64,000 bases of DNA, from positions 76,880,001 through 76,944,000 of the forward strand of contig CM069137.1 in NCBI GenBank assembly GCA_035221665.1. The letters are read 5' to 3'. This document shows, piece after piece, positions 27,401 to 63,996 of this stretch. The position numbers were made by a program, and so were the translations under genes. Numbering within the stretch: position 1 is the stretch's first letter; each line of letters starts with the position of its first letter. This DNA comes from Okamejei kenojei. Taxonomy: Eukaryota. The notes beneath the pieces are model-generated. The model did not search any database. It worked only from the letters and a program-made list of their open reading frames with translations, and had not been told where the DNA came from.

Positions 27401-30400
27401 CCAGCATTTTTGTCTACCTTCGATTTTTCCAGCATCTGCAATCTTTCTTGAACAAGTAACCAGTAAGAATCATATTGAAGCTGTGGAAAAAACATTACCC
27501 TTTGAAATGAGTTGTCTGGGCTCTCAGAGTATACTATAAAAGAGTTGTATTTGTTATTGTTCGATACCTTTCACAGTCACGTCAGTTTTGCATGAATCCT
27601 TTCCAATATCATTGCTGGCCTCGCAAATGTATTGACAAGCATCTCCCTTGTCTGCTTTCAGAATAATTAGGTGAGGTGTATTTTCTACATAAGATATCTT
27701 GTAATTGCCACCTGATCGCATCTCATTGCCATCCTTCAGCCAAGTAACTTTAACTGGTGGAGAGCCAGTTAAGTGGCATTCAAGATCCACACTTTGCCCA
27801 GCTGTAACTTCCACTGGTTGTAATCTTTTGTCAAATACAGGGGCAACTCTAGGCTCTAAAGACATAACAAAAATATAATTATGTTTTATTGTAAAATAAT
27901 TAACAGCAAGGTACTAACACCTAGCAATGTTAGATGAAAGCAGATACTAAAATGTCAATATTATAATATTGAAGACAAATTAGTAATTATTTAATCCAAT
28001 TTACCTTTAAGAATTAATCTGGAACTGCAAGAAACATCTCCTATCATGTTAGATGCTTTGCAACTGTATTCACCAGCATGATCCATCTCAGTTTTAAGAA
28101 TTTGAAGAGATGCTACATTCTCCATGAAAGATATATTTAAGTTTTCTCCAGGGAGCAGTTTTATACCATCTTTAAACCAAGAAGTTTCAATAGGAGCTGA
28201 ACCAGTCGTGCAACACTCAAATGTTATTGGAAGACCAAGAGTTACTTCCATATTCTTAAGTTTTCTTACAAAAGAAGGTGCCGTTTTGCGTTCTGTAAAA
28301 TAAACCGGAATGGAATGAATTAATATAATGAGATTATAGAAGCTTTAAAAGTTCAAAGGGCTCCAGCATAAATATATACATTCTCCACAAATACCAATTA
28401 ATCTACCAAAGAACATCACCTTGTACAGTGAACACCGCCTTTGATGAACATACACCTATTTTGTTTTCAGCTTTGCACATAAATTCTCCACAGTCATTCA
28501 TTGTTACTTTCTTCAATTCCAATTTTGCAATATTGTTTACAAATTCCATTTTGCAATTTGGGGTGGCTCTCAGTTTTGTGTCTCCTTTGTACCAAGCTAC
28601 TTTAATTTCAGGTGTTCCACTGAGTGTGCATTGAAAAGATCCTGAATCACCGACTGTTATTTCCAGAGGCTCTAAATGTTGGACAAACGTTGGTGGTTCT
28701 ATGAAGAAAAAAACGTATCATTGATTGAAGATAATGCACATCAAATATTTTTTTAAAGAAACGAGCAAAGCTTTGATTTTTATTCCGCAGCTAAAAGATA
28801 TTGAAAGGAAACGAACCCAATATGTTCACTTCAGCATGACAAGTGTCAGTTCCAGCATCATTTTCTACTTCACACATATATGTTGCACCATCGTCTCGAA
28901 TGGTGTTGAGAATCTCCAAAATACAAGAAGTTTCAGTGGTAGTTAAAATATGCTTTTCAGACTGGACTATATCTAAGCCATTCTTCTTCCAATGTACTTT
29001 GATTTCTGGGGTACCAGAGTATATGCAGTCAAGACAAACTGATTTTCCCAGTATCACACTAGAATCTTTCAATTTTTTCTGGAATACTGCTGGTTCTGGT
29101 GAAGATAGAGAAGAAAACAGTTGCAAAAATATATACTTGTAACTCCAGCAAAATGATGTTACCCACATCTACACATTACTAAAACTCTTATCTTGTCTGT
29201 GATTCTGACCGTTTGTCTGTCTGTTTGTCTGTCTGTTTGTCTGTGTGTCTGTCTGTGATGAGTGTGATCATGAAATTACGCCAAAACAGTACATGACAGC
29301 GCTATAATTTTTTGACCACCTTATTCACCAGCATCCTGTGGTATGGTGCATCAAAGTTTTGTTGAGATATTTTTACAAGTTATTCACATTTTAAACTTTA
29401 AAAATGTAATTTTTCACTTTAAAAAATGTAATTGCACTTTCCCTGCCCCTGCCTTTACAATGTTACAAATGACAGGACACAAGAAGAGGGAGGGGAGTGC
29501 TGGGGGATGAGGTGAAATGAGCCACGCCTGCACAGATGGGGGGTTATTGGTGAGTGGTGGAATATTGCGTTGGTGGAGCAAATGCGTTGGGGGAACGGGT
29601 GAGTGGTGGAATATTGCATTGGGGAACAGGACCCGGGGGAGGGAGTGCTGGGGAATGAGTGGAAATCTGCCGCACCTGTGCAGTTGGGGGCTATGGGTGA
29701 GCAGTAGGATATTGCGTTGGTGGAACGGGTTGCGTTGGGGGAACGGGTGAGTGGTGGAATATTGCTTTGGGGGAACGGGACCCAACAGGGTTCCACTTGG
29801 TCTAGTTCTTCTTTAAAACTCTATTTCACAAACCTTTCACAAACAATTTTGTGGTACAAGAATCTTCACCAGCTTCGTTCCTGACACGGCAAATGTAGTC
29901 TTCACTTTGGGAAGGTACTACATTTAGTAGCTCAAGTACTGATATTGAGTCACTGAAAGAAATTCGACATTTTCTCCCTGTTACTAGTTCAGTGTTCCCT
30001 CTAAACCATTTTACTTTCAATGGTGCTGTCCCAGTAACAACACATGCAAATTTCACTGTTGAGCCCGGTAACACTTCCTGAGGATCAGGTTTGCTCACAA
30101 ATGAGGCTGGTTCTAAAGAGGTGGAAACAAAATAAGATGTTTAAAATTAATTGGGAATTTAAAATTCAAGCATTTTGCTATAAACAAAATTACATTAAAT
30201 TTTTCTTTAGGTGTAAGTCTAGAAGATTTGCATAATCAGGCCATTTGACTCTGTATTAATAATCTCATTGTTCCAGCACTGAATTTTTTCTCCTCACTCT
30301 TCTCATCCATTTCATTCTACTTACATTTTCAAGTCTGCAGATAACATCTCTGCAGTAGTCCGGATCTCAAACAGTGAGACAAACCACAGGAAGGAGACAG

Positions 30401-33400: not shown

Positions 33401-36400
33401 TTTGCCTTTTATCTTTGTACCAAGTAACTTCAAAAGGAGATGTACCACTGAATTCACATTGCAGAATGACATCAGAGCTTTTTATTACATCCATTGTCTT
33501 CAGCATTTTATTGAAAACAGGTGGTTCTGGAAGAAGAGCATAAGTTGTATCATTTTTGTATTTATGATGAAATAGTTATTTATAACCAAGAAATCCTTTA
33601 TCATTTGTAACAGAAAATAACTACCTACCTTTGACATTAAGTGCTACACTGCAGCTGACACTTCCAGCTTCATTTTGAGCGTCACAAATGTAATCACCAC
33701 TGTCTTCTACATCAGTATCATTAATTTCAAGAACTGCTATAAAATTATCAAAATGTATTTTGTATTTGTCACCATCTCTGATTTCAGTATCATTCTTGAA
33801 CCATGAAATTTTGATTTCAGGTGTGCCAGTCACTTTGCACTCAAAATGCACGGATTCTCCCTTCTTCAGGACTTTGGATGGTTCCAGCTTCTGGATGAAA
33901 GATGGAGGTTCTAGGAAACCAAAGTACAACACATTTAGTGCTTGAATTACAAGAAGGTTATGTTTTGGAAAGTAGAATTGTGAAATGTGGAAGGAATTTG
34001 AATCATTATCACAAATCATATGAGAATGCTCCAAAAGTTTTGAAAAAGCCCATGTATATTAACTGGAATTTTACTGTATTTCATATAAAGAAAATTTAAA
34101 GAAGAGTATATTATATTACTGAGATCACGAAGAGCACAAAAAGATAATGTAGAATTGATATGATAAAGAGAATAAGATGATTACACAATTAAACTCAAAG
34201 AACATAAGACACTAACATAGAATACACATAAAACAAGATTTGTACAAATTGGAAGACTTGGAATATGAAAAGACATTAACAGCAAATAACAAACAAGACA
34301 CTGATAATATATACCCACACAACAAAGAATTCCACACCTGTTACAAACAATTTTGCTGTACAAGAATCTGTGCCAACATCATTGGTGACATGGCAAGTGT
34401 AATATCCCGTATTAGAATGTTTTACTGAATAAAGTTGCACAAAACTGGATGAAACTTCTGTCACAATGCAACATGTTCCATCAGGATGTAACTCTTTGTC
34501 ATCCTTAAACCATTTGAAAGACAGAGGAGGTGTTCCGTTAGCATCACTCTTGAACAGCACTGTAGAGCGTGGGGGAACCTCCTGTGACATTGGTTTTGTA
34601 ATAAATCTTGGTGGCTCTAAAATTCATTGAAGAAAAACATATTTGTTGCAAGAAAGAGCATAAGTTTCTAAATTTTGAATTTTGAACCATTAATAAATTA
34701 AAAATAGTTATTTCAATCATAAGACATTTAAGTGTTAAAATACGACAAATCTGAGATCTATTTTGCCAAAAGTATGAGGAAAAATGCAAAGGCAGTCACA
34801 CCTTTAACAATCAGTTTGCTACAGCATTCATCAGTTCCTGCTATATTTGATACTCTGCAAGTATAAATTCCACAATCAGCGATTTCTAGTTGATTAATTT
34901 CCAAAGATGAGGTGTTATCTTGCTGTGATAGTTTATATTTATTACTATCCATGATCTCCTTTCCATCTTTATGCCAAAAAATGGTCATTGGAACAGAGCC
35001 AGATACTTTGCACTCCATGCTCACAGAAGAGCCTAGTGCAATGCCCATGTCCTTCAATTTTTTTGTAAATGTTGGAGCAATCAATTGATCTGTACAATAT
35101 AGAACACAACTTGTAAGTTTGAGATGCAAAAGTTAACCTAAAAGAGCAAAGTTGCTTAGATTACTGTATTCTATTTTTCACATACAAATAAAAATACTAA
35201 CCTAATACAGCCAAGGAAGCTTTGCAGCTGTCAACTCCAAATTCATTCTGGACCTCAAAAGTATATTCACCACTATTCGACTTCTCTACCGACTGTATCT
35301 TTAGACTAGCCACATTATTTTCAAAGCTCAATTTACATTTTCTGCTGGATGTGAGCTCCATTCCATCTTTAAACCATTTAACAATTAGATCTGGTGTGCC
35401 TGCCACAGTACACTCCAAAACTGCTGGATTTTGTACAGTTATGTTGCATGATTTTGCTCTCTCAACAATTTTTGCAGGTTCTGTTAAGAGAAAATATTAT
35501 GCTAATTGATGACAGTAATTTAATATTTTAATCCTGTCTTCTTTTTCACATTAGTATGATAAATAAATTTGAAGATAAGTAAATAAAATATTTACACATC
35601 AGCCAATCATATTTGTTAATATTCCTGACCAACCTGTTACTATCAATATGGCATAGGATTTCTCAATCCCTGCGTCATTTTTGGCCTGGCAGATGTATTT
35701 CCCACCATCTTTTGCTTCAACTGCTGCAATTTTCAGCATTGCAAGATTGTTTTCAAAGGAAATTGATGTATTTTCGTCTTCTTTGATATCTACATCATTT
35801 TTCATCCAATTAATTGATAAAGGCTCTGAACCTTTTACAACACACTGAAAGCCAGTAGAATTTCCAACAAACGTTGTAACATTTTCAATCTTCTTCACAA
35901 ATGATGGGGGTTCTAGTTGAAGATAAAGAGGTATACATATAAATATGAATGAAATGCTCTACCCTCTTTCAAAATTATAGTATAATGGCAAAATATGCTG
36001 CTTTATGGAACTGATCATTAAAAAAGTTTAAATTAAATTTACAAGTTAGCTGCTAAAATCGCAATATGCCTACAGTGTTCCATTTTACTTGAAATCGGTG
36101 TATTCCATTTTACTTGAAATACATTCAGTAAAAATGACAAAACATACACCACTACCACCATGTAACTAACCTTTTAAACTGACAATACAACTGCAGGAAC
36201 AGCTTCCCACATCATTGCTTGCTGTGCATTTATATTCGCCAACAAGTGACACATCCACCTTCAAAATATGAAGGCTACTTAAAACATTCTTTGTGATCAT
36301 TTTGTATTTTTCACTTGGTGGAATCTTTTTATTGTCCTTGTACCACACAACGTCAAAGGGACCTGTACCAGCCAACTCACATTCAAGAATAACACCATTG

Positions 36401-57400: not shown

Positions 57401-60400
57401 GTTAAAGATTTTCCAGTCGTCATCTTGAATTTTATACTTGACTGAATTTGCTTATTGTCCTTATACCAAATCACATCAAATGGACTTGTACCAGAAATGT
57501 CACATTCAAGACTGATGTCATTTCCTTTCACTACCTCAATTGGTTGCAGTTTCTTGCTAAAAGAAGGAGGTTCTTTTTAAAAAAAGAAAGGAAAAGAATT
57601 AAGGTACCTGATCAGATAATACACATCACTGGAAAATAAGTTTTCAAATTCTGTCATTACATTTTATGATCACACACCTTTAACAGTAACTGTAACATTG
57701 CAGTTGTCAAAGCCAGCTTCATTCTCTGCTCTACAAGTGTAATATCCACTGTCTTCCACACTGACATTATTAAGTTCAAGAACAGATTTTGAATCAACAA
57801 AGGACATCCTGAATTTGTCACTTGGGAGAATTTCACTTTCTTGCTTGTACCAATTGACTTTAATCTCCGGTGTACCAGTTATAGTACACTCTAGAGATGT
57901 TGAACTTCCTTTTTTCAATAATGTTATACGATCTGGTTTCTTAATGAAGTTTGGAGGCTCTATAAACCAAAATGCAATGAAATTAATGAGAAAATAAAAC
58001 AAAAGATTTTATGTAAACTCAATAAATACATTGGAATAATATAGTTGATTAGCATGACAAAAGCATTATCATAAAGATCATGGACAAAATGTGTCATCTG
58101 TCATTGATTTATGATTTACATTTTAAACGACATGAAATTCACGAACACATGTAAAGACCACTGAAAATTGACAAATCACAAGCTAAAAATGGTTTGGAAA
58201 GTTTGGAAATGGTTTACCTCGAGTCCTATCCGTCCATATCAAAATCTTAGCTCTGTGCCTAATCTCCACAAATGATATGCAGCACTAATCTTCACTTATC
58301 ATGATTATCATGGTTTTCACATCATGATTTTCAAACAATGACAGCTGGACAAGTGGGTTGAGGAGTAGCTAATAGAGTTTAATGGAGGTGTTCCATTTTG
58401 GGAGGTCAAACAGGCAAAGACCCTCATGGTGAATTGTAGGGCCTTGTGGAGTGTTGTTGAACAGAGGGATCCAGGAAAATAGCCTCAGGTTTATAGGATG
58501 GTCAAGATTGCTTTTGGTTCATTGGCTTTCTTCAGTCAGGATATTGATTATAGAAGTTGAAATGTTATGTTACAGTTGAACAACACCTTGGGGAGGCCGC
58601 ATTGGAGTATTGTGTTTAGTTCTGGTCAACTTGTTATAGGAAGGAAGTTAAGAATGCAGACAACCTGAGCTATAGGGAGAGGTTGGGCAGTCTAGGACTT
58701 TATTCCTCAGAGTGTAAGAGGCTGAGGGGTAATCTTATAGGTATATAAAATCATGAGGGGAAAAGTTATGGTGAATGCACGGAGTCTTTCACCTTGAGAT
58801 GGGAACACCAGAGGACATAGGTTTAAGGTGAAAGCGGAAAGGTTTAATAGGAACCTGATAGGAACAAGCTTCCAGAGGAGTTTGTTGAGGTTAGTACTGT
58901 AACAAAGGTTTGAGCATGATCTGTTGAAAGGAATGTATATGTCAAACTATTCTGCTTAATTTCAGAATATCTCCATAATTCTTAAAAAGACAAGTGAGAA
59001 AACAAAGGAAAAACACAGCAGTGGACCCTCCTGAGCATACAATGCTACAGGGATGACTTGGCACCATTAAGATTGGATGGCGCCTCTGCAGTAGAAATTG
59101 GGCAAAACAGTAAACCCAAGTTGCGGCCTCACTATCAAACCATGTCTATTTATGGACTGCCTCTCATTAAGTTTTCTTTTGTGATAATTCTACTATCTTA
59201 ACTTTAATGTTCTGTGAATTATATGTCTTTGTTCATGCTGCATTGAATTGGTCAGCACCTTGTACTCAAATATACATTTAATTATCGAAGTAAAATTGCA
59301 AAAAGGAATGAGTTTCTAACTAAAGAACTTGACACTAAACAATCTTTACGTTTATCTTGTTCCATAGCATGTGCGCAAGGTTTCTTTTTTACATAATTGG
59401 AGTGCACAATTGTTATCTAGCAAGGGAATAATTGTAAAAATAAAATATTCCTGACTGCTTTCCATTGACTTGCTCACAGAAAAAAAAGTTTGAGATGGAA
59501 AATATAAATAGATATTGATATTGATATTGCAGATTTCAAAGGCAGAATACGGTGCAAGCTCATAATGGGCCTGTCCCACGTAGGTGATTTTTCAGGTGAC
59601 TGCCGGCGACTGTCAGAGTGGAACACAAACACATCGCAGGCAGGGGACAGAGCAAGCAGGGAGAGCTCTGTCTAAAATTCACACGGTGCAAAGCCAAGAT
59701 GATACAGACACACACCGCGATGAAAAGGAAGGTTGGTGTTGTAATTAAGATGGCTACAGCACAGAGTACGGTAAGTCATTAAAAAAAGGTGGAAGAGAGG
59801 GGGGGGGGGGAGAAGGGGGAAGAAGGAGTGGAGACAACTTTAAACAAGCCAGGCAACTTTTAAGAAGCCAGAGATACACGGCTGTGAAGTTCAGCAGACA
59901 TTTAACATTACCGGTCGGTTATCCTTGGTTCTGAAAACTACCACTTACGTTTTTTTTCCCCACTGAGTCAATTAAATTCACCAGTCAGCACCGGCTACAA
60001 TCTACAAAAATCTATGAGAACCTTCGACCTCTTGGCAACCCACTAGGACCTCCTGGCGGCCCACCTACGGCACGAGAATTCTCGCTATTCTCCATGGTGG
60101 CTTCATTCTAGTCACCGCTAATTTTTCAACATGTCGAAAAATTCACGGCGACCATAATGAGGCTGCGACTAGTTCCCAGAATGCGGGAATCCCCATGACC
60201 ATGAAGGCATCTCCCCGGCAACCACCCGCGAACATGCGGCGACCATGTGGCGACTGCATAGTCTCCAGCAGTCACCTAAAAAGTCGCCTAAGCGGGACAG
60301 GCACATTAGTTTGGCCATAAAGTCCTGAAGTTATATATAGCGAATGCAAATTTCCAATTAAAAACAAAGATTATGGGGCATGCCATTGCATCAGTTTACA

Positions 60401-63400
60401 TAAAGACATAAAGAACAAAAGGTAGAAAAAGATAAATGTTTCATCAGTCTAATAAAAGTAAGACACAGCTATTAGTATTAATGTGGAAAGAAGATTCAGG
60501 CTGAAAAGAACGCAGTATGGATAAGTATAAATTGAAAAAAAAGGGAATCTTCACATAAAGTTATTTTTTCAAAAGAAACAATGAAATGAAACCATTTACA
60601 TCGCTACAAAGAATCAATAGATATTCCACACCTTTGACAAAAAGACTTGCCACGCACGATTCAGTGCCAACTTCATTGCTGACTCGGCAAGTGTATTCAC
60701 CAGTATCAGCGACTTTTGCTGAATGGAGTTGTAGCATACTTGTTGAACCTTCTTTTGAAATGTACAGTGAATTACTCGGCACCAACTCCTTTTTGTCCTT
60801 GAACCATTTGATGGTTATTGGTGGAGTTCCACTAATAACACTCCTAAACTGTACTTTGGAACCAGGTACGACATCCTGGGACAAAGGCTTCACAGTGAAA
60901 TATGGTTGTTCTAAAAATTCCAGAGGAAAACTAGTCATTATCACAATATAATAAAATAAAATTTAATAAAGTACTTTTTATGAAAATAGAAATGTTATAC
61001 CAAGATTGGCATAAGAATAAATGGGTATGTGCAATACATGCATTCTCAACATGTTTGTAAAGCACTAAATTAAATGAATGACAAGTATTGTTTTGCCATA
61101 GAGGGAGTACAGAGAAGGTTCATCAGACTGATTCCTGGGATGGCCGGACTTTCATATGAAGAAAGACTGGATAGACTCGGCTTGTACTCACTAGAATTTA
61201 GAAGATTGAGGGGGGATCTTATAGAAACTTACAATATTCTTAAGGGGTTGGACAGGCTAGATGCAGGAAGATTTTTTCTCGATGTTGGGGAAGTCCAGAA
61301 CAAGGGGTCACAGTTTAGGGATGGGGGGTGAGATGAGAAAAAAAAAAATCACACAGAGAATGGTGAATCTGTGGAATTCTCTGCCACAGAAAGTAGTTGA
61401 GGCCAATTCATTGGCTATATTTAAGAGGGAGTTAGATGTGGCCCTTGTGGCTAAAGGGATCAGGGGGGTATGGAGAGAAGGCAGGTACGGGATACTGAGT
61501 TGGATGATCAGCCATGATCATATTGAATGGCGGTGTAGGCTCGAAGGGCCGAATGGCCTACTCCTGCACCTTTTTTCTATGTTTCTATGGATAACTGAAG
61601 GTTATTAGTCAATCAGCTGAAGATTATTAGACAATCTGGTTAATTTTGAAGCAATTAAGATATTGATTGCAACATTTCAAACCTTTCACTGTTAAGGCAC
61701 CAATGCTCTGATCAGTTCCAGCAGCATTTGTTGCTCTGCAAGTGTACGTTCCACCATCTGTCATCTCTAATTGATGGATCTCCAACTGTGCAATGTTATC
61801 ATGGTAAGAAAATTTATATTTTTCGGTAGCTGATAATTCTTCATTGTCCTTATACCAAAGCACACTCATTGGAAGAGAACCAGTGATTTTGCATTCCATC
61901 TTAATAAAAGAAGATTTGATGCCATCCATATTTTTTAAGTTTCTTTTGAATATTGGTGGAACTATGCGATCTGTCCAACACATGGTGGGAAATCAAAGAT
62001 TATTATTTCTTCCAAATTCTTTGCAGATTCTTTTCAATAAGTTCAATGAAATGGAAGGGTAAAAATACCAACCCAATACTGTAATGGAAGCTTTGCATCT
62101 GCTGTTACCAACGTCATTTTGGACCTCACAGGCATATTCACCACTATCCTCTTTCTCAGTGAAAGGGATCTTTAAACTAGTAACCTTATTTGTAATGCTG
62201 ATTTTGTATTTTCTCCCACTAATCAACTCTGTGCCATTCTTAAACCATTTGGCTTTAATTTCTGGTGTTCCTGTAAAAGTGCAGTCCAGTGTTGCTGGCT
62301 CTCCTGCAGTTACACTAATAGAGTCTGCTTTTTCTATTATACTTGCAGGTTCTGTGACAATAAAAAAAATCATATTAGAGCAAGAATATGAGAAACAATA
62401 GAAGACTATTAATTTTCCTGCCATGAGCTGAAATATTGAACTAATTAAAAAAAACACACCGACAATCTTTGTAAAGGCTATATTGCTTATCCAAGCCTCC
62501 TTGTGTTCAGGAGAGATGATCAAACAAATGTTTATCGTGTCAAATTGAATTGACTTGAAGTTGTTGGGAGCCAATACACATCAACTGTTAGCGACCCACT
62601 TTGTTTGAGACTTTCCCACCTGCTTTGCAAAATACATAAGTCTGAAAGCCACATACCAACCTATCTAAACTTTCTCCATTCTAGGCTTTCTATCAAGTCC
62701 TGTGGCAAAGTAATGATGTGGAGGAAGGAGAGCAGCATTTTGTAACTATTCCCTCAGTTCTATGTAGGAGCTGGTTAATGCGCAAAGGAGAATTCATTTA
62801 TTTCTTTGAATAAACACAGTTAAAATAATTTATAAAGGAAAATGTGTGAATGATTTAATTTCATTTTACTTTAATGTTTTTAAGTGCTCTACAGTTTTTA
62901 AGTTTTGTTTTACCATTTAAAATAATTAAATCTAATTAACTAATTTTTAAATATTACTTACTCTCAAATATATTAAAACATTGTTCCAAACCATTGGACC
63001 ATGATAAACAGCCATAGGCTGCAAGGGTATTCATAGTGAGAGAGGTTAGACACAAAAACAATAGTTGTTTTCACACCCTTTATGATGTTATATGGCATTA
63101 TGGTAATATGAAAGTTATGTGGCATTTTGAGCATTGACCTGTGGCCTTGTTAAAATACTAATTAAAGATAAGAGTTGATAAAGAAATGAAGGGAGCAACA
63201 TTGAAAGAAACCGAATGAAGGAAGGACACATTAAATAATTTAAAAAAGAGATAGAAAAAAAGATTAGATTAATGGAGTTTTTGAAGGAAATAAAACTAAC
63301 ATGTTTTGAAATCTCTGAGTAATTTACTGCTTGCAAGTAAGATAATAGTTTTAATTGAATAATCCCTTTCTGACCCCACAATATTATACTTCATGTCACT

Positions 63401-63996
63401 ACCATAAATCAAATAATTTCAAATGCCCTTGCAACATGAAACACTAGTGCAAATCATCCAGCAATTTATGACTTCAACAACTAATAGTATATATTTTCCT
63501 GCCTCAAATCCCAAGTTTTATGCATTCAGCACTCTAGCCCTAAATTTACTTTTACAAATACTTTCTTTATAGTTTAACCATTCTAAAAAATATAGTATTT
63601 GTTTTCAATGTCTTACAACATCATTCAAAAAATTAAAATAACTCAGAACACTGCAAGCTGTTAATTTTTAGAAATAGCTGAATTATTAACATTGAGGATA
63701 GCATTCTTTAAACTAACCTTTCACAGTTAAATTTGCAACACACTTTGTGATTCCAGCATCATTCTTTGCCTGACAAACAAACTTTCCACCATGATGTTTT
63801 TCTACCGTAGTAATCTGCAGTGTTGCTATATCTTTTTCAAAAGATATTTTAGTATTAGTATCTTCAGTAATATCATCTTTATCTTTTTGCCAGGAAATGG
63901 AAATTGGGCTTGAACCTTTCACAGTACTTTGAAACATAGCAGGCATTCCCAAAAGAACTGTAATATTTTCAATCTTCTTGAAAAACGATGGTGGTT
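361..63996 (-). CDS. TTN: Titin, internal multi-exon fragment: I-band tandem Ig segment, N2A element and proximal PEVK; gene extends beyond both window ends
   Basis: Tandem I-set Ig exons (EPPxF...C...W.K...D.G.Y.C); diagnostic N2A peptides [70 protein letters not shown]; PEVK-type small exons; GT/AG borders in compatible phases. Confidence 0.98.
590..635 (-). mobile_element. Short 3' tail fragment of a Rex/Babar-like LINE
   Basis: gtttagattattgccacttgtaccgagg resembles the tail at 37040-37075. Confidence 0.4.
1390..1461 (-). CDS. TTN: TTN PEVK exon, 72 nt, [24 protein letters not shown]
   Basis: tttaag acceptor, gtataa donor, phase 1-1. Confidence 0.88.
2404..2478 (-). CDS. TTN: TTN PEVK exon, 75 nt, [25 protein letters not shown]
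   Basis: polyT-aag acceptor, gtataa donor, phase 1-1. Confidence 0.88.
3580..3646 (-). pseudogene. TTN: Degenerate PEVK exon copy ([20 protein letters not shown]...) without an in-phase donor
   Basis: Acceptor and 5' half match neighbouring PEVK exons; paralogous donor reads AAAG|GA; nearby GTs are phase 0. Confidence 0.55.
3930..4370. mobile_element. Old, degraded Penelope-like terminal repeats in inverted arrangement
   Basis: gagacccttcacc near 4085 and tctcgaacctgaaacatt...ctgttgagttattccag at 4289-4352 resemble the younger copies at 48937 and 21164. Confidence 0.4.
4650..4695 (-). mobile_element. 46-bp Penelope-like fragment with 14-bp target-site duplication
   Basis: gctggagaaactcagc motif; tgatcgtgtgatta at 4636-4649 and 4696-4709. 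Confidence 0.7.
4757..4831 (-). CDS. TTN: TTN PEVK exon, 75 nt, [25 protein letters not shown]
   Basis: ttttaag acceptor, gtatgg donor, phase 1-1. Confidence 0.82.
6043..6117 (-). CDS. TTN: TTN proximal PEVK (E-rich) exon, 75 nt, [25 protein letters not shown]
   Basis: ttttaaag acceptor typical of PEVK exons, gtagag donor, open phase 1-1. Confidence 0.75.
6655..6750 (-). mobile_element. CR1 LINE 3' fragment
   Basis: ctatctctgccttaaaaatatccattgacttggcctcca resembles other CR1 3' ends in window. Confidence 0.5.
7123..7143 (-). CDS. TTN: TTN PEVK microexon, 21 nt, EEWTEEI
   Basis: polyT-acag acceptor, gtaaca donor, phase 1-1; resembles recalled human EEWEEDFE motif. Confidence 0.7.
   Translation of the reverse strand, partial: KNGLKK
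7390..7480 (+). mobile_element. Penelope-like terminal repeat fragment with degenerate hammerhead-like core
   Basis: ccgaagaagggtctcgacccgaaacatcacccattcc...gagttactccagca; repeated several times in window. Confidence 0.65.
8328..8505 (-). mobile_element. CR1 LINE 3' fragment
   Basis: ccgccattcgatcatggctgatc 3'UTR motif. Confidence 0.65.
8724..8762. repeat. 13-bp tandem repeat x3 (gttagattcctaa)
   Basis: Directly visible, next to a splice donor. Confidence 0.85.
8770..8814 (-). CDS. TTN: TTN exon after N2A, 45 nt, [15 protein letters not shown]
   Basis: tttag acceptor, gtaaaa donor, phase 1-1; positional match to recalled human DIPDSRVPIP exon. Confidence 0.8.
9029..9055 (-). CDS. TTN: TTN microexon, 27 nt, EINLQQRKP
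   Basis: tacag acceptor, gtatgt donor; positional match to recalled human EIKLELKPP. Confidence 0.8.
9144..9221 (-). CDS. TTN: TTN I83 C-terminal exon (...[19 protein letters not shown]), apparently disrupted in this sequence
   Basis: Matches recalled human ARLEPRGEARSTAELY; donor intact; no AG at expected acceptor; +1 and -1 indels. Confidence 0.7.
9303..9775 (-). mobile_element. CR1 LINE 3' portion with many small deletions
   Basis: catagaaac tail, gatcatggctgatcatccaactcagta and catcccaggaatcagtctggtgaacc match the copies at 22975 and 61088. Confidence 0.8.
10123..10332 (-). CDS. TTN: TTN I83 N-terminal exon, 210 nt
   Basis: [36 protein letters not shown]...VTTEDE; GT/AG. Confidence 0.95.
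10418..10678 (-). CDS. TTN: TTN I82 exon, 261 nt
   Basis: [11 protein letters not shown]...[16 protein letters not shown]...EDQGRFTC; GT/AG. Confidence 0.95.
10773..11040 (-). CDS. TTN: TTN I81 exon, 268 nt
   Basis: [11 protein letters not shown]...[19 protein letters not shown]...[12 protein letters not shown]; phase 0-1. Confidence 0.95.
11126..11212 (-). CDS. TTN: TTN UN2A exon 2, 87 nt
   Basis: [29 protein letters not shown]; phase 0-0. Confidence 0.92.
11322..11505 (-). CDS. TTN: TTN UN2A exon 1, 184 nt (MARP/ANKRD-binding region)
   Basis: [51 protein letters not shown]...ETHRV; phase 2-0. Confidence 0.93.
11769..12051 (-). CDS. TTN: TTN I80 main exon, 283 nt
   Basis: [24 protein letters not shown]...DFRAKLKK; phase 1-2. 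Confidence 0.95.
12150..12239 (-). CDS. TTN: TTN linker + I80 N-terminal exon, 90 nt
   Basis: [30 protein letters not shown]; tttag/gtaagt; phase 1-1. Confidence 0.9.
13160..13212 (-). mobile_element. 3' tail of a second CR1 family; continues at 14662-15147
   Basis: gaacaggcccttcggcccaccatg tail motif. Confidence 0.6.
13213..14661 (-). mobile_element. CR1 LINE, 5'-truncated, degenerate RT domain and 3'UTR
   Basis: ORF remnants [49 protein letters not shown]; ctatgtttctatg tail. Confidence 0.9.
14662..15147 (-). mobile_element. CR1 LINE (second family) ORF2 C-terminal remnant
   Basis: CMQFWLPH...[40 protein letters not shown]. Confidence 0.85.
15148..15366. mobile_element. Internal fragment of a hairpin-forming MITE-like element related to 59565-60306
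   Basis: gactgccggc and aattttcaacatgttgaaaat shared with 59565 element; long inverted repeat. Confidence 0.6.
15630..15917 (-). CDS. TTN: TTN Ig exon class L (I79-like), 288 nt
   Basis: [35 protein letters not shown]; GT/AG, phase 1-1. Confidence 0.95.
16181..16318 (+). mobile_element. CR1 3'UTR-only insertion with 7-bp TSD tgaccta
   Basis: gatcagccacgatcacaat...ctatgtttctatg; flanking direct repeat. Confidence 0.8.
16732..17022 (-). CDS. TTN: TTN Ig exon K3 (I78-like), 291 nt
   Basis: [22 protein letters not shown]; GT/AG. Confidence 0.95.
17984..18271 (-). CDS. TTN: TTN Ig exon J3 (I77-like), 288 nt
   Basis: [11 protein letters not shown]...[10 protein letters not shown]; GT/AG. Confidence 0.95.
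18604..18891 (-). CDS. TTN: TTN Ig exon I3 (I76-like), 288 nt
   Basis: [11 protein letters not shown]...[10 protein letters not shown]; GT/AG. Confidence 0.95.
19090..19415 (-). mobile_element. CR1 LINE 3' fragment
   Basis: Closely similar to 13213-13600. Confidence 0.85.
19862..21790 (-). mobile_element. Old degraded CR1 LINE, interrupted by a Penelope-like fragment
   Basis: aaacataagaaactggagcagg tail, ggaatcagtttagtgaa, ttccacattatattcca, gtcaaacatgattttcctttcataaatcc. Confidence 0.6.
21164..21246 (-). mobile_element. Penelope-like terminal repeat fragment
   Basis: Reverse complement of ctgaagaagggtctcgacc...ctccagca family. Confidence 0.7.
21870..22160 (-). CDS. TTN: TTN Ig exon K2 (I78-like), 291 nt
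   Basis: [22 protein letters not shown]; GT/AG. Confidence 0.95.
22975..23412 (+). mobile_element. Young CR1 LINE 3' end
   Basis: [24 protein letters not shown]...RTRGHSL ORF2 C-terminus and ctatgtttctatg tail. Confidence 0.92.
23928..24215 (-). CDS. TTN: TTN Ig exon J2 (I77-like), 288 nt
   Basis: [11 protein letters not shown]; GT/AG. Confidence 0.95.
24369..24656 (-). CDS. TTN: TTN Ig exon I2 (I76-like), 288 nt
   Basis: [11 protein letters not shown]; GT/AG. Confidence 0.95.
25320..25407 (-). mobile_element. Penelope-like terminal repeat fragment
   Basis: Same family as 21164-21246. Confidence 0.7.
25651..25941 (-). CDS. TTN: TTN Ig exon K1 (I78-like), 291 nt; absent from ORF track
   Basis: [43 protein letters not shown]...VSVLIQ; GT/AG. 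Confidence 0.95.
26040..26256. mobile_element. PIF/Harbinger-type MITE, 217 bp
   Basis: TIR agggcctgtcccacttggg / cccaagtgggacaggccct; TTA duplication on both sides. Confidence 0.9.
27296..27452. mobile_element. Penelope-like inverted (palindromic) insertion with 15-bp TSD
   Basis: Near-perfect palindrome 27293-27420; caagtaaccagtaag at 27281-27295 and 27453-27467. Confidence 0.8.
27568..27855 (-). CDS. TTN: TTN Ig exon J1 (I77-like), 288 nt
   Basis: [12 protein letters not shown]; GT/AG. Confidence 0.95.
28005..28292 (-). CDS. TTN: TTN Ig exon I1 (I76-like), 288 nt
   Basis: [13 protein letters not shown]; GT/AG. Confidence 0.95.
28420..28698 (-). CDS. TTN: TTN Ig exon class H, 279 nt; absent from ORF track
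   Basis: [18 protein letters not shown]...[12 protein letters not shown]...KAENKIG; GT/AG. Confidence 0.95.
28817..29095 (-). CDS. TTN: TTN Ig exon class G, 279 nt
   Basis: [14 protein letters not shown]...[12 protein letters not shown]; GT/AG. Confidence 0.95.
29168..29805 (+). mobile_element. Non-autonomous Helitron, 638 bp
   Basis: Inserted between A and T; 5' TC; 3' CTAG preceded by hairpin gggaccc-aaca-gggttcc; no TSD; (tctg/tttg)n and G-rich internal repeats. Confidence 0.8.
29834..30112 (-). CDS. TTN: TTN Ig exon class D, 279 nt
   Basis: [11 protein letters not shown]...KLFVK; GT/AG. Confidence 0.95.
30395..31240 (+). mobile_element. Rex/Babar-like LINE 3' portion, degenerate
   Basis: aacaacctcttcctcaatgtcagcaaa, caagttccttggtg (KFLG), acagcttcttc motifs; tgacaataataaac tail. 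Confidence 0.7.
31315..31665 (+). mobile_element. Second Rex/Babar-like LINE 3' fragment
   Basis: gcagccagcatcatcaga...caggttcaggaacagcttcttccc...tgacaataaaacactcttgac. Confidence 0.65.
32073..32360 (-). CDS. TTN: TTN Ig exon class C, 288 nt
   Basis: [13 protein letters not shown]...[10 protein letters not shown]; GT/AG. Confidence 0.95.
32464..32742 (-). CDS. TTN: TTN Ig exon class B, 279 nt
   Basis: EPATIVEK...YTFEVQN; GT/AG. Confidence 0.95.
32860..33138 (-). CDS. TTN: TTN Ig exon class A, 279 nt
   Basis: [11 protein letters not shown]...CQIKNDAG; GT/AG. Confidence 0.95.
33248..33526 (-). CDS. TTN: TTN Ig exon class F, 279 nt
   Basis: [21 protein letters not shown]; GT/AG. Confidence 0.95.
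33629..33910 (-). CDS. TTN: TTN Ig exon class E, 282 nt
   Basis: [18 protein letters not shown]; GT/AG. Confidence 0.95.
34338..34616 (-). CDS. TTN: TTN Ig exon class D, 279 nt
   Basis: I-set Ig ORF; GT/AG, phase 1-1. Confidence 0.95.
34802..35089 (-). CDS. TTN: TTN Ig exon class C, 288 nt
   Basis: [12 protein letters not shown]; GT/AG. Confidence 0.95.
35202..35480 (-). CDS. TTN: TTN Ig exon class B, 279 nt
   Basis: I-set Ig ORF; GT/AG. Confidence 0.95.
35634..35912 (-). CDS. TTN: TTN Ig exon class A, 279 nt
   Basis: I-set Ig ORF; GT/AG. Confidence 0.95.
36171..36449 (-). CDS. TTN: TTN Ig exon class F, 279 nt
   Basis: [11 protein letters not shown]; GT/AG. Confidence 0.95.
36560..36841 (-). 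CDS. TTN: TTN Ig exon class E, 282 nt
   Basis: I-set Ig ORF; GT/AG. Confidence 0.95.
37038..37555 (-). mobile_element. Rex/Babar-like LINE 3' portion
   Basis: gtttagtttattgtcacg tail; gaaactgtccctgaatct, tgattatgctgctggc. Confidence 0.7.
37953..38231 (-). CDS. TTN: TTN Ig exon class D, 279 nt
   Basis: I-set Ig ORF; GT/AG. Confidence 0.95.
38273..38298. repeat. (TA)n microsatellite
   Basis: Directly visible. Confidence 0.95.
38510..38797 (-). CDS. TTN: TTN Ig exon class C, 288 nt
   Basis: [13 protein letters not shown]; GT/AG. Confidence 0.95.
38938..39216 (-). CDS. TTN: TTN Ig exon class B, 279 nt
   Basis: I-set Ig ORF; GT/AG. Confidence 0.95.
39473..39980 (-). mobile_element. CR1 LINE 3' end
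   Basis: [23 protein letters not shown]...RTRGHSL; tail ctatgtttcta. Confidence 0.92.
40271..40549 (-). CDS. TTN: TTN Ig exon class A, 279 nt
   Basis: [15 protein letters not shown]; GT/AG. Confidence 0.95.
40680..40958 (-). CDS. TTN: TTN Ig exon class F, 279 nt
   Basis: I-set Ig ORF; GT/AG. Confidence 0.95.
41682..41963 (-). CDS. TTN: TTN Ig exon class E, 282 nt
   Basis: I-set Ig ORF; GT/AG. Confidence 0.95.
42197..42475 (-). CDS. TTN: TTN Ig exon class D, 279 nt
   Basis: I-set Ig ORF; GT/AG. Confidence 0.95.
42710..42997 (-). CDS. TTN: TTN Ig exon class C, 288 nt
   Basis: I-set Ig ORF; GT/AG. Confidence 0.95.
43345..43623 (-). CDS. TTN: TTN Ig exon class B, 279 nt (core Trp replaced by Cys)
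   Basis: [13 protein letters not shown]; GT/AG. Confidence 0.93.
43763..44041 (-). CDS. TTN: TTN Ig exon class A, 279 nt
   Basis: [12 protein letters not shown]; GT/AG. Confidence 0.95.
44205..44483 (-). CDS. TTN: TTN Ig exon class F, 279 nt (chimeric junction exon)
   Basis: [11 protein letters not shown]...[11 protein letters not shown]; GT/AG. Confidence 0.95.
44588..44869 (-). CDS. TTN: TTN Ig exon class E, 282 nt
   Basis: I-set Ig ORF; GT/AG. Confidence 0.95.
45511..45789 (-). CDS. TTN: TTN Ig exon class D, 279 nt
   Basis: I-set Ig ORF; GT/AG. Confidence 0.95.
46025..46312 (-). CDS. TTN: TTN Ig exon class C, 288 nt
   Basis: I-set Ig ORF; GT/AG. Confidence 0.95.
46433..46711 (-). CDS. 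TTN: TTN Ig exon class B, 279 nt
   Basis: [16 protein letters not shown]; GT/AG. Confidence 0.95.
47225..47503 (-). CDS. TTN: TTN Ig exon class A, 279 nt
   Basis: I-set Ig ORF; GT/AG. Confidence 0.95.
47661..47939 (-). CDS. TTN: TTN Ig exon class F, 279 nt
   Basis: I-set Ig ORF; GT/AG. Confidence 0.95.
48130..48762 (+). mobile_element. Old degraded CR1 LINE 3' portion
   Basis: ttaggccccagc...cagttctgg, cagagaagattgacagagatgttgc, cttccttggagca. Confidence 0.6.
48905..49028 (+). mobile_element. Penelope-like terminal repeat with intact hammerhead-like core
   Basis: ctgaaga-agggtctcgaccc-gaaa-catc at 48937-48964. Confidence 0.7.
49120..49295 (+). mobile_element. CR1 3' fragment
   Basis: gatcagccatgatcatattgaatggcggtgc...ctatgtttcta. 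Confidence 0.85.
49560..49841 (-). CDS. TTN: TTN Ig exon class E, 282 nt
   Basis: I-set Ig ORF; GT/AG. Confidence 0.95.
50072..50350 (-). CDS. TTN: TTN Ig exon class D, 279 nt
   Basis: I-set Ig ORF; GT/AG. Confidence 0.95.
50564..50851 (-). CDS. TTN: TTN Ig exon class C, 288 nt
   Basis: I-set Ig ORF; GT/AG. Confidence 0.95.
51852..52033. mobile_element. PIF/Harbinger-type MITE, 182 bp
   Basis: 30-bp perfect TIR agggcctgtcccacttgggcgtcatttgcg; TTA duplication. Confidence 0.9.
52234..52512 (-). CDS. TTN: TTN Ig exon class B, 279 nt (core Trp replaced by Cys)
   Basis: [13 protein letters not shown]; GT/AG. Confidence 0.93.
52635..52913 (-). CDS. TTN: TTN Ig exon class A, 279 nt
   Basis: I-set Ig ORF; GT/AG. 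Confidence 0.95.
53072..53350 (-). CDS. TTN: TTN Ig exon class F, 279 nt
   Basis: I-set Ig ORF; GT/AG. Confidence 0.95.
53437..53718 (-). CDS. TTN: TTN Ig exon class E, 282 nt
   Basis: I-set Ig ORF; GT/AG. Confidence 0.95.
53897..54175 (-). CDS. TTN: TTN Ig exon class D, 279 nt
   Basis: I-set Ig ORF; GT/AG. Confidence 0.95.
54909..55196 (-). CDS. TTN: TTN Ig exon class C, 288 nt
   Basis: [12 protein letters not shown]; GT/AG. Confidence 0.95.
55612..55752. mobile_element. Penelope-like inverted terminal-repeat pair
   Basis: caaagtgctggagtaactcagcag ... ctgctgagttactccagcactttg (24-bp inverted repeat). Confidence 0.7.
56475..56753 (-). CDS. TTN: TTN Ig exon class B, 279 nt
   Basis: [12 protein letters not shown]; GT/AG. 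Confidence 0.95.
56862..57140 (-). CDS. TTN: TTN Ig exon class A, 279 nt
   Basis: I-set Ig ORF; GT/AG. Confidence 0.95.
57294..57572 (-). CDS. TTN: TTN Ig exon class F, 279 nt
   Basis: I-set Ig ORF; AAG acceptor, GT donor. Confidence 0.93.
57678..57959 (-). CDS. TTN: TTN Ig exon class E, 282 nt
   Basis: I-set Ig ORF; GT/AG. Confidence 0.95.
58340..58910 (+). mobile_element. Degenerate CR1 LINE 3' portion
   Basis: gaggccgcattggagtattgtgtttagttctgg, gaggctgaggggtaatcttatag, ccagaggacataggtttaagg. Confidence 0.75.
59565..60306. mobile_element. Longer MITE/non-autonomous DNA transposon of the gggcctgtcccac TIR family
   Basis: atgggcctgtcccacgtaggtga ... tcgcctaagcgggacaggcacat imperfect TIRs. 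Confidence 0.75.
60632..60910 (-). CDS. TTN: TTN Ig exon class D, 279 nt
   Basis: [17 protein letters not shown]; GT/AG. Confidence 0.95.
61088..61590 (+). mobile_element. Young CR1 LINE 3' end
   Basis: [25 protein letters not shown]; tail ctatgtttctatg. Confidence 0.92.
61683..61970 (-). CDS. TTN: TTN Ig exon class C, 288 nt
   Basis: [12 protein letters not shown]; GT/AG. Confidence 0.95.
62073..62351 (-). CDS. TTN: TTN Ig exon class B, 279 nt
   Basis: [12 protein letters not shown]; GT/AG. Confidence 0.95.
63718..63996 (-). CDS. TTN: TTN Ig exon class A, 279 nt
   Basis: [14 protein letters not shown]...CQAKNDAG; GT/AG. Confidence 0.93.

What the first reader, a model, noticed from the sequence alone, without database searches (positions are those of the whole stretch)
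27568..63996. Re-engineered titin spring: expanded 6-Ig super-repeat but only one 10-Ig super-repeat
Seen: 46 consecutive Ig exons cycle through six classes with a strict length barcode of 282-279-279-279-288-279 nt (E-F-A-B-C-D). There is one partial unit at the window edge, then six complete units (57959 to 34338), then a final E-F-A-B-C-D followed once by classes G-H-I-J (33910 to 27568). Known: the mammalian skeletal I-band has three 6-Ig and three 10-Ig super-repeats, the 10-mer being the 6-mer plus four domains. Inference: this lineage lengthened the spring by a different route, and the single 10-mer may be the ancestral state that was triplicated elsewhere.
Basis: partly seen in the sequence, partly recalled or inferred. 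Interest (0 to 1): 0.8.

Follow-up and report, generated by a model that had tools for sequence, protein, structure and literature searches.

The report
Skate titin spring: known cartilaginous-fish pattern
This is the elastic "middle-Ig" part of the titin muscle-spring gene of a cartilaginous fish, built from at least seven 6-domain repeats but only one 10-domain repeat; the pattern is real and transcribed, but the same layout and the same evolutionary conclusion were published for chimaera and whale shark in 2025.

Summary
On the minus strand, 58 single-exon Ig (I-set) domains run from 63996 to 15630. All are phase 1-1 with AG/GT splice sites. The first 46 follow the length code 282-279-279-279-288-279. 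Same-class domains are 56% identical on average and different-class domains 31%. The classes form clades with 97-100% support, except E, inside which the lone G domain nests on a long branch. G and H occur once, at 29095-28420.

Six domains match rabbit titin I65-I70 (PDB 3B43) position for position, which fixes the repeat register. Transcript-like contigs of the same organism join the exons from F of the 10-mer to J exactly at my predicted boundaries.

The copies are at most 92% identical in exons, so assembly duplication is excluded.

Hanashima et al. 2025 (PMC12241362) reported 6+1 super-repeats in elephant shark, 8+1 in whale shark, 3+1 in zebrafish and 3+3 in human, and drew the same conclusion.

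Two caveats:
- Classes I and J are not single. An I-J-K trio is triplicated just downstream, so eight rather than two Ig domains follow the 10-mer.
- I could not read the roughly 11 kb upstream.

The scan has notes only on this same stretch, none on other DNA. Verdict: a new member of a known kind, of low to moderate interest.

The parts
60632..63996 (-). Partial 6-Ig unit at the window edge: classes A, B, C, D (x1-x4)
   Evidence: Exons 63996-63718, 62351-62073, 61970-61683 and 60910-60632, of 279, 279, 288 and 279 nt. Each falls in its class clade. The E and F exons of this unit must lie beyond the window.
53897..57959 (-). 6-Ig unit 1 (x5-x10: E F A B C D)
   Evidence: Exons 57959-57678, 57572-57294, 57140-56862, 56753-56475, 55196-54909 and 54175-53897, of 282-279-279-279-288-279 nt.
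50072..53718 (-). 6-Ig unit 2 (x11-x16)
   Evidence: Exons 53718-53437, 53350-53072, 52913-52635, 52512-52234, 50851-50564 and 50350-50072. x13-x16 pair with x25-x28 at 77-89% aa identity.
45511..49841 (-). 6-Ig unit 3 (x17-x22)
   Evidence: Exons 49841-49560, 47939-47661, 47503-47225, 46711-46433, 46312-46025 and 45789-45511. The 46312 exon has a tandem acceptor at 46315/46312. These exons pair with x29-x34 at 79-84% aa identity and dS 0.24-0.51.
42197..44869 (-). 6-Ig unit 4 (x23-x28)
   Evidence: Exons 44869-44588, 44483-44205, 44041-43763, 43623-43345, 42997-42710 and 42475-42197.
37953..41963 (-). 6-Ig unit 5 (x29-x34)
   Evidence: Exons 41963-41682, 40958-40680, 40549-40271, 39216-38938, 38797-38510 and 38231-37953.
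34338..36841 (-). 6-Ig unit 6 (x35-x40)
   Evidence: Exons 36841-36560, 36449-36171, 35912-35634, 35480-35202, 35089-34802 and 34616-34338.
29834..33910 (-). First six domains of the single 10-Ig super-repeat (x41-x46: E F A B C D)
   Evidence: Exons 33910-33629, 33526-33248, 33138-32860, 32742-32464, 32360-32073 and 30112-29834. x41, x42 and x43 best match I68, I69 and I70 of PDB 3B43. All are full-length Pfam I-set domains. Transcript-like contigs show spliced joints at every boundary from x42 to x46.
28817..29095 (-). G-class exon (x47), position 7 of the 10-mer; single copy in the window
   Evidence: 279 nt, Pfam I-set E=1.2e-19. It has no favoured partner among I65-I70 (23-42 bits each), as expected because position 7 is absent from that crystal structure. 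Joints 29834|29095 and 28817|28698 are present. It sits on a long branch nested in class E.
28420..28698 (-). H-class exon (x48), position 8 of the 10-mer; single copy in the window
   Evidence: It scores 93.1 bits on I65 (3B43 residues 4-95), against 65.6 bits for the next domain. It is spliced to G and I.
28005..28292 (-). I-class exon (x49), position 9 of the 10-mer
   Evidence: Its best match is I66 (3B43 residues 97-191). It has two paralogues downstream, x52 and x55, at 72-79% aa identity.
27568..27855 (-). J-class exon (x50), position 10 of the 10-mer
   Evidence: Its best match is I67 (3B43 residues 195-285; 2RIK residues 5-93). It has paralogues x53 and x56 at 78-83% aa identity.
16732..25941 (-). 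K exon, then two more I-J-K trios (x51-x57); outside the finding but part of the same array
   Evidence: Exons 25941-25651 (K), 24656-24369 (I), 24215-23928 (J), 22160-21870 (K), 18891-18604 (I), 18271-17984 (J) and 17022-16732 (K). I, J and K are each one clade with 100% support. dS between copies is 0.24-0.47.
15630..15917 (-). Last middle-Ig exon (x58, 'L') before N2A
   Evidence: 288 nt with an open frame. It is a singleton sister to class J.
10103..12093 (-). N2A element (four Ig domains and the unique sequence), which anchors the array within titin
   Evidence: The open frame at 10741-11121 matches titin I81 (PDB 7AHS E=4e-56; 5JOE E=1.3e-39). Four Ig-like hits lie at 12049-10112. PEVK-like frames follow at about 3656 and 484.

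Best explanation
This is the differentially spliced 'middle-Ig' (skeletal tandem-Ig) part of the I-band spring of the titin/connectin gene of a cartilaginous fish. Other follow-ups in this scan call the genome a skate; I did not test the species. Each I-set Ig domain is one phase 1-1 exon, so any run of exons can be duplicated or skipped without breaking the reading frame. The array was built by block duplication. An old 6-exon unit (E-F-A-B-C-D) is present at least seven times. Two of those units came from a later 12-exon duplication. One 10-domain repeat (E-F-A-B-C-D-G-H-I-J) follows, then a triplicated I-J-K trio, one last Ig domain, and N2A. Block duplication keeps neighbouring domains only about 30% identical while adding spring length, roughly 4-5 nm per domain. 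That per-domain figure, and the idea that unlike neighbours avoid misfolding together, come from established knowledge of titin and were not measured here. Shown here: the exon structure, the class cycle, position-specific orthology with mammalian I65-I70, purifying selection on the duplicated copies, and splicing of the F-to-J exons of the 10-mer. Inferred: that the extra units lengthen the expressed spring, and that the single 10-mer is the ancestral state. The second point agrees with Hanashima et al. 2025.
For: There are 58 exons with the strict length code and canonical splice sites. The period-6 identity signal is clear, and class clades have 97-100% support. All ten domains of the 10-mer are full-length Pfam I-set. 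H, I, J, E, F and A best match I65 to I70 of PDB 3B43 in order, with G as a negative control. N2A I81 lies downstream. The lag-12 pairs have dS 0.14-0.51 and dN/dS 0.15-0.60. Contigs of 2.7-2.8 kb from runs X9 and X15 lack all eight introns between x42 and x50 exactly at the predicted GT..AG boundaries, and DNA contigs from another sample (X5) carry the same DNA. The published chimaera and whale-shark layouts are 6+1 and 8+1.
Against: The upstream part of the array lies outside the window. That covers the E and F exons of the partial unit, any further units, and the I27-29 equivalents, so the total count and the absence of further G/H exons are not shown. Only the 10-mer region was checked for splicing. 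Use of the 6-Ig units in muscle was not tested, and elephant shark muscle skips one unit. The run type of X9 and X15 is not on record. The tool guesses 'RNA? (probably DNA)', and my cDNA reading rests on the intron-less contigs. Eight Ig domains follow the 10-mer here, not the two published for other cartilaginous fish, so the layout is not identical to theirs.
Confidence: 0.9

Rival explanations
1. The extra units are assembly duplications, such as haplotigs or mis-expanded tandem repeats, and are not real gene content.
For: Tandem arrays of similar units are a classic place for assembly errors. Depth could not be measured because only contigs, not raw reads, were available.
Against: No two units are close copies. 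The best exon pairs are 85-92% identical in DNA. Whole blocks including introns are 76-83% identical. Every copy has its own substitutions under purifying selection. DNA contigs from an independent sample and study (X5) match the window with 3-6 differences per 1.5 kb.
Confidence: 0.02
2. There are further 10-Ig repeats (G/H exons) just upstream of the window, so the gene is not of the 'one 10-mer' type.
For: The window starts inside a unit. About 11 kb lie between the window end and the N2B unique sequence according to an unchecked scan note.
Against: In all four species analysed in PMC12241362, the 10-mers lie after the 6-mers, next to N2A. Upstream of x1 the cycle is in 6-mer register. About 11 kb must also hold the E and F exons of the partial unit and the three I27-29-like domains, and it leaves room for at most about one more unit at this exon density.
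Confidence: 0.04
3. The genomic expansion does not lengthen the working spring. Many 6-Ig units are skipped by splicing, or are decaying exons, so the protein is no longer than in other vertebrates.
For: This segment is the classic alternatively spliced part of titin. Elephant shark heart skips i28-69 and its skeletal muscle skips i36-41. Two B-class domains (x14, x26) carry C, and one C-class domain (x45) carries Y, at the core tryptophan position. The transcript contig ends right at the start of x41, which could be a splice branch point.
Against: All 58 exons are open with intact splice sites. The duplicates show dN/dS of 0.15-0.60 at dS of about 0.3, so both copies have been kept as coding sequence for a long time. 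x45 is included in the spliced contig even though it lacks the tryptophan.
Confidence: 0.15

Closest known systems
Elephant shark (Callorhinchus milii) connectin/titin middle-Ig segment (Hanashima et al. 2025, PMC12241362)
   Same: More than three 6-Ig super-repeats followed by a single 10-Ig super-repeat, one Ig domain per exon, and N2A downstream. The evolutionary reading is the same: cartilaginous fish lengthened the segment by 6-Ig duplication, independently of mammals.
   Different: [quoted passage not shown] This window shows at least seven units (six complete and one cut by the window edge) and eight Ig domains after the 10-mer, because of an I-J-K triplication.
Whale shark (Rhincodon typus) connectin middle-Ig segment (same paper; taken from a genomic scaffold)
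   Same: Eight 6-Ig units plus one 10-Ig unit. That total is compatible with this gene if one more unit lies upstream. It is also two units more than chimaera, the size of the 12-exon duplication seen here.
   Different: Only two Ig domains (w88-89) are reported after the 10-mer. I could not test whether the 12-exon duplication is the same event.
Human/rabbit titin I48-I77, three 10-Ig super-repeats (crystal structure I65-I70, PDB 3B43)
   Same: There is position-for-position orthology with I65-I70 for repeat positions 8, 9, 10, 1, 2 and 3. Domain lengths match for the 94-, 93- and 93-aa domains at positions 1-3. All 58 domains keep an NxxG motif and 30 of the 58 begin with an EPP-type motif.
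   Different: Mammals triplicated the whole 10-mer and kept three 6-mers. Here the 10-mer is single, the 6-mers are expanded, and only the I-J-K end is triplicated.
Zebrafish connectin-a (ttna) middle-Ig: three 6-Ig plus one 10-Ig
   Same: A single 10-mer after the 6-mers. This is the proposed ancestral jawed-vertebrate state.
   Different: Only three 6-Ig units.

Membership tests
Titin/connectin I-band middle (differentially spliced) tandem-Ig segment | Chain of I-set Ig domains, one per exon, with symmetric phase 1-1 exons | tested here: met
   There are 58 exons of 279-291 nt, all phase 1-1 with AG/GT sites. All ten exons tested match Pfam I-set over the full length, with E between 1e-18 and 1e-26.
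Titin/connectin I-band middle (differentially spliced) tandem-Ig segment | Specific orthology to titin domains, not to other Ig-chain proteins | tested here: met
   The best PDB hits are titin I65-I70 (E from 1e-92 to 1e-120), each query landing on the predicted domain. Robo, contactin and MyBP-C score far lower.
Titin/connectin I-band middle (differentially spliced) tandem-Ig segment | Lies between the N2B and N2A elements, with PEVK after N2A | tested here: inconclusive
   N2A I81 is confirmed downstream, along with four Ig-like hits and PEVK-like frames. N2B upstream is known only from an unchecked scan note.
Titin/connectin I-band middle (differentially spliced) tandem-Ig segment | Transcribed and spliced exon to exon | tested here: met
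   Contigs from runs X9 and X15 join x42 through x50 at the predicted boundaries and extend about 282 nt further, the length of x41. This was not tested for x1-x40.
6-Ig / 10-Ig super-repeat architecture | Domains six apart are more alike than neighbours, and classes form clades | tested here: met
   Identity is 54-63% at lags 6, 12, 18 and 24 against 30-34% elsewhere. Classes A, B, C, D and F are clades with 97-100% support.
6-Ig / 10-Ig super-repeat architecture | The 10-mer is the 6-mer plus four further domain types, in register with mammalian I48-77 | tested here: met
   E-F-A-B-C-D-G-H-I-J spans 33910-27568. H, I and J match I65-67, and E, F and A match I68-70. Positions B, C, D and G have no solved mammalian counterpart, so they were not mapped.
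Cartilaginous-fish type middle-Ig (Hanashima et al. 2025) | More than three 6-Ig super-repeats | tested here: met
   Six complete units and one cut by the window edge lie before the 10-mer.
Cartilaginous-fish type middle-Ig (Hanashima et al. 2025) | Exactly one 10-Ig super-repeat in the whole gene | tested here: inconclusive
   G and H occur once in the 64 kb. The upstream roughly 11 kb could not be read.
Cartilaginous-fish type middle-Ig (Hanashima et al. 2025) | Two Ig domains between the 10-mer and N2A | tested here: not met
   Eight Ig exons (x51-x58) follow the 10-mer, because the I-J-K trio is present three times.

The most novel reading that the evidence does not exclude
This skate-like fish may carry the longest middle-Ig array yet described. 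It would have at least 63 Ig domains: the 58 seen, the E and F exons of the cut unit, and three I27-29-like domains. The array would have been built in part by two events of similar age (dS about 0.3): a 12-exon, two-unit duplication and a triplication of the I-J-K trio next to N2A. If the trio triplication and/or the 12-exon duplication are specific to batoids, spring length has kept changing in blocks within elasmobranchs. The distal end of the 10-mer would then have been expanded independently in mammals (the whole 10-mer) and in skates (I-J-K).
Probability: 0.4. Interest if true: 0.4.

Novelty: new member of a known kind. Interest (0 to 1): 0.25.

Why it matters
Titin's tandem-Ig segment sets the slack length and passive stiffness of striated muscle. 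How vertebrate lineages tuned it is a real question in muscle evolution, but for cartilaginous fish it was answered in outline in 2025. This window extends that picture to one more lineage, apparently a skate. It gives an exon-level map with splice-confirmed boundaries for the 10-mer. It shows that the duplicated copies are under purifying selection. It also contains two younger block events that could be used to date and compare expansions among sharks, rays and chimaeras. It does not overturn or open anything.

Tried and rejected
- **Assembly duplication:** rejected on the divergence of the copies and on an independent DNA sample.
- **Hidden or decayed Ig exons that would break the cycle:** tblastn with all 58 domains found nothing outside the 58 exons and the four N2A Ig domains at E of 1e-3 or better.
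- **Read laying:** the first try failed on the server side; the second worked. All four runs are kept as contigs, so read depth and copy number could not be measured. Only one 6-kb stretch could be laid, so the 6-Ig units were not checked for splicing.
- The protein is not open and the claim does not rest on absence of relatives. As a result I built no tree with other species' domains and rely on the published tree.
- **Joined (spliced) model:** none was built or searched. Every search was exon by exon, by reference. The unit-level comparison used per-exon values only.
- **Synonymous distances between classes F and C at lag 6:** the values look low, but each rests on about 65 synonymous sites with high dN. 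I draw no conclusion about gene conversion.

Full report
**What is in the window**

The window has no N. Stop-free stretches on the minus strand show a long row of titin-type Ig domains. These are followed at lower coordinates by an N2A-like unique sequence and PEVK-like frames.

I fixed exon ends by three requirements: an in-phase AG acceptor, an in-phase G|GT donor, and an Ig signature. This gave 58 exons from 63996 to 15630. All are phase 1-1, all end in G, and all have canonical splice sites.

Exon lengths are:
- 279, 279, 288 and 279 nt for x1-x4;
- 282-279-279-279-288-279 repeated seven times for x5-x46 (57959 to 29834);
- 279, 279, 288 and 288 nt for x47-x50 (29095 to 27568);
- 291, 288, 288, 291, 288, 288, 291 and 288 nt for x51-x58.

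**Is the cycle more than chance?**

Mean amino-acid identity among x1-x46 is 54-63% at lags 6, 12, 18 and 24. It is 30-34% at every other lag. Same-class pairs average 55.8% (range 37-89%). Different-class pairs average 31.5% (maximum 46%).

In a maximum-likelihood tree of all 58 domains, classes A, B, C, D, F, I, J and K are each a single clade with 97-100% bootstrap support. Shuffled labels never clustered as well: 0 of 500 shuffles for each class, and 0 of 200 for all groups together. Class E is one clade except that the lone G domain nests inside it on a long branch, with poor local support.

A tblastn search with all 58 domains finds no further Ig-like sequence in the introns. The only other hits are the four N2A Ig domains downstream.

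**What it is**

All ten exons of the 10-mer match Pfam I-set over the full profile. Against solved structures, the best hit by far is titin I65-I70 (PDB 3B43). Each query lands on one particular domain of that chain:

| Exon (class) | Best match in 3B43 | Titin domain |
|---|---|---|
| x48 (H) | residues 4-95 | I65 |
| x49 (I) | residues 97-191 | I66 |
| x50 (J) | residues 195-285 | I67 |
| x41 (E) | residues 289-382 | I68 |
| x42 (F) | residues 383-475 | I69 |
| x43 (A) | residues 477-569 | I70 |

For H, the favoured domain scores 93 bits against 66 for the next best. G corresponds to repeat position 7, which is absent from that crystal. As expected, it has no favoured partner, scoring 23-42 bits on each domain.

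The human 10-mers are I48-57, I58-67 and I68-77. That is position-for-position orthology with the mammalian super-repeat.

Downstream, the open frame at 10741-11121 is titin I81 of N2A (PDB 7AHS and 5JOE). An unchecked scan note puts the N2B unique sequence about 11.5 kb beyond the window end.

**Expression and assembly**

Runs of the same organism label hold the stretch. On window 27540-33530, contigs of 2797 and 2706 nt from runs X9 and X15 (one sample) lack all eight introns between x42 and x50. The joints fall exactly at my exon ends. They read CT..AC on the plus strand, which is GT..AG on the gene strand.

The contigs run a further 282 nt upstream, which is the length of x41. The run type is not on record, and the tool guesses 'RNA? 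(probably DNA)'. Intron-less contigs that differ from the window by about one letter per exon are what cDNA looks like.

So the exons from the 10-mer's F through D, G, H, I and J are spliced into one transcript. DNA contigs from a different sample and study (X5) carry the same DNA, with 3-6 differences per 1.5 kb.

Assembly duplication is excluded by divergence. The closest exon pairs are 85-92% identical. Whole blocks including introns are 76-83% identical.

**History inside the array**

Exons x13-x22 and x25-x34 pair at lag 12, with 77-89% amino-acid identity, dS of 0.14-0.51 and dN/dS of 0.15-0.60. The flanking pairs x12/x24 and x23/x35 are weaker, at 74% and 69%. This is a 12-exon, two-unit duplication, and both copies have been kept under purifying selection. 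All other same-class pairs have high or saturated dS, about 0.7 to over 2.

The copies that belong to the 10-mer (x41, x42, x43, x46) branch first within classes E, F, A and D. Support is strong only for D. This fits an early split between the 10-mer and the 6-mers, followed by 6-mer expansion.

Downstream of J, the trio I-J-K is present three times (x49-51, x52-54, x55-57), at 72-83% amino-acid identity and dS of 0.24-0.47. A single last domain follows. Thus G and H are single, but I and J are not.

**How it most likely works**

Because every exon is one domain in phase 1-1, any block can be duplicated or skipped without breaking the frame. Duplicating six or twelve exons at a time adds spring length. 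It also keeps neighbouring domains unlike each other: adjacent pairs average about 32% identity, with a maximum of 45%. The published discussion links this to avoiding co-aggregation of similar neighbours.

That more Ig domains give a longer, more compliant spring is established titin biology. It is inferred here, not measured.

**Comparison with what is known**

Hanashima et al. 2025 (Sci Rep 15:24715, PMC12241362) report the following middle-Ig layouts:

| Species | 6-Ig super-repeats | 10-Ig super-repeats |
|---|---|---|
| Elephant shark | 6 | 1 |
| Whale shark | 8 | 1 |
| Zebrafish | 3 | 1 |
| Human | 3 | 3 |

They conclude that cartilaginous fish and mammals lengthened this segment independently, starting from a zebrafish-like ancestor with one 10-mer.

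A second literature search found no paper on this segment in a ray or skate. Other follow-ups in this scan call the genome a skate. I did not test the species.

What differs here:
- the unit count is at least seven;
- eight rather than two Ig domains follow the 10-mer, because of the trio triplication;
- the 12-exon duplication is dated by its dS.

The trio and the 12-exon duplication are the subject of separate notes on this same window. The scan has no note of this pattern on other DNA.

**Limits**

- Depth could not be measured, because all four runs are kept as contigs.
- Only the 10-mer region was checked for splicing.
All searches were exon by exon, by reference.

**Verdict**

This is a new member of a known kind, of low to moderate interest.

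Noticed in passing
window 16732-28292: The I-J-K Ig trio is present three times before the last middle-Ig exon (72-83% aa identity, dS 0.24-0.47). As a result, eight Ig domains rather than the published two lie between the 10-mer and N2A. A separate scan note already covers this.
   Followed up: partly
window 37953-53350: A 12-exon (two-unit) duplication pairs x13-x22 with x25-x34. Exon DNA identity is 85-92%, dS 0.14-0.51 and dN/dS 0.15-0.60. The edges (x12/x24, x23/x35) are more diverged. Whale shark has two more units than elephant shark, which is the size of this event. I did not test whether it is the same event.
   Followed up: partly
window 52512-52234, 43623-43345 and 32360-32073: The core tryptophan of the Ig fold is replaced by C in two paralogous B-class domains (x14, x26) and by Y in the C-class domain of the 10-mer (x45). 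x45 is nevertheless included in the spliced contig.
   Followed up: partly
window 29140-29939 and 31340-31739: Two stretches of the 1960-nt intron between x45 and x46 have contig word depths of 10^3 to 10^5 in DNA runs, so they are very high-copy repeats. Reverse-transcriptase-like open frames lie at 39709-40086, 13482-13784 and 14417-15014. The 2025 paper proposed, without testing, that transposons drive these block duplications.
   Followed up: no
window 46312-46315: The C-class exon x21 has a tandem (NAGNAG-type) acceptor, so it could be 288 or 291 nt long.
   Followed up: no
window 53350-40680 (F-class exons x12, x18, x24, x30): The four F-class domains of units 2-5 are all 74-84% identical to one another, even at lag 6, where other classes are about 50-60%. 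This could reflect gene conversion or stronger constraint. The dS values are too noisy to decide.
   Followed up: partly
window 33910 (start of x41) and 27593: The transcript-like contigs start at about the first base of x41 and stop 25 nt before the end of x50. These could be graph break points caused by alternative splicing into x41 and by the near-identical J paralogues.
   Followed up: no
window 28817-29095 (x47, class G): In the domain tree, G nests inside class E on a long branch. Classes C, I, J, K and L share a three-residue longer N-terminal linker and group together. This hints that the four extra domains of the 10-mer are themselves old copies of 6-mer classes.
   Followed up: no
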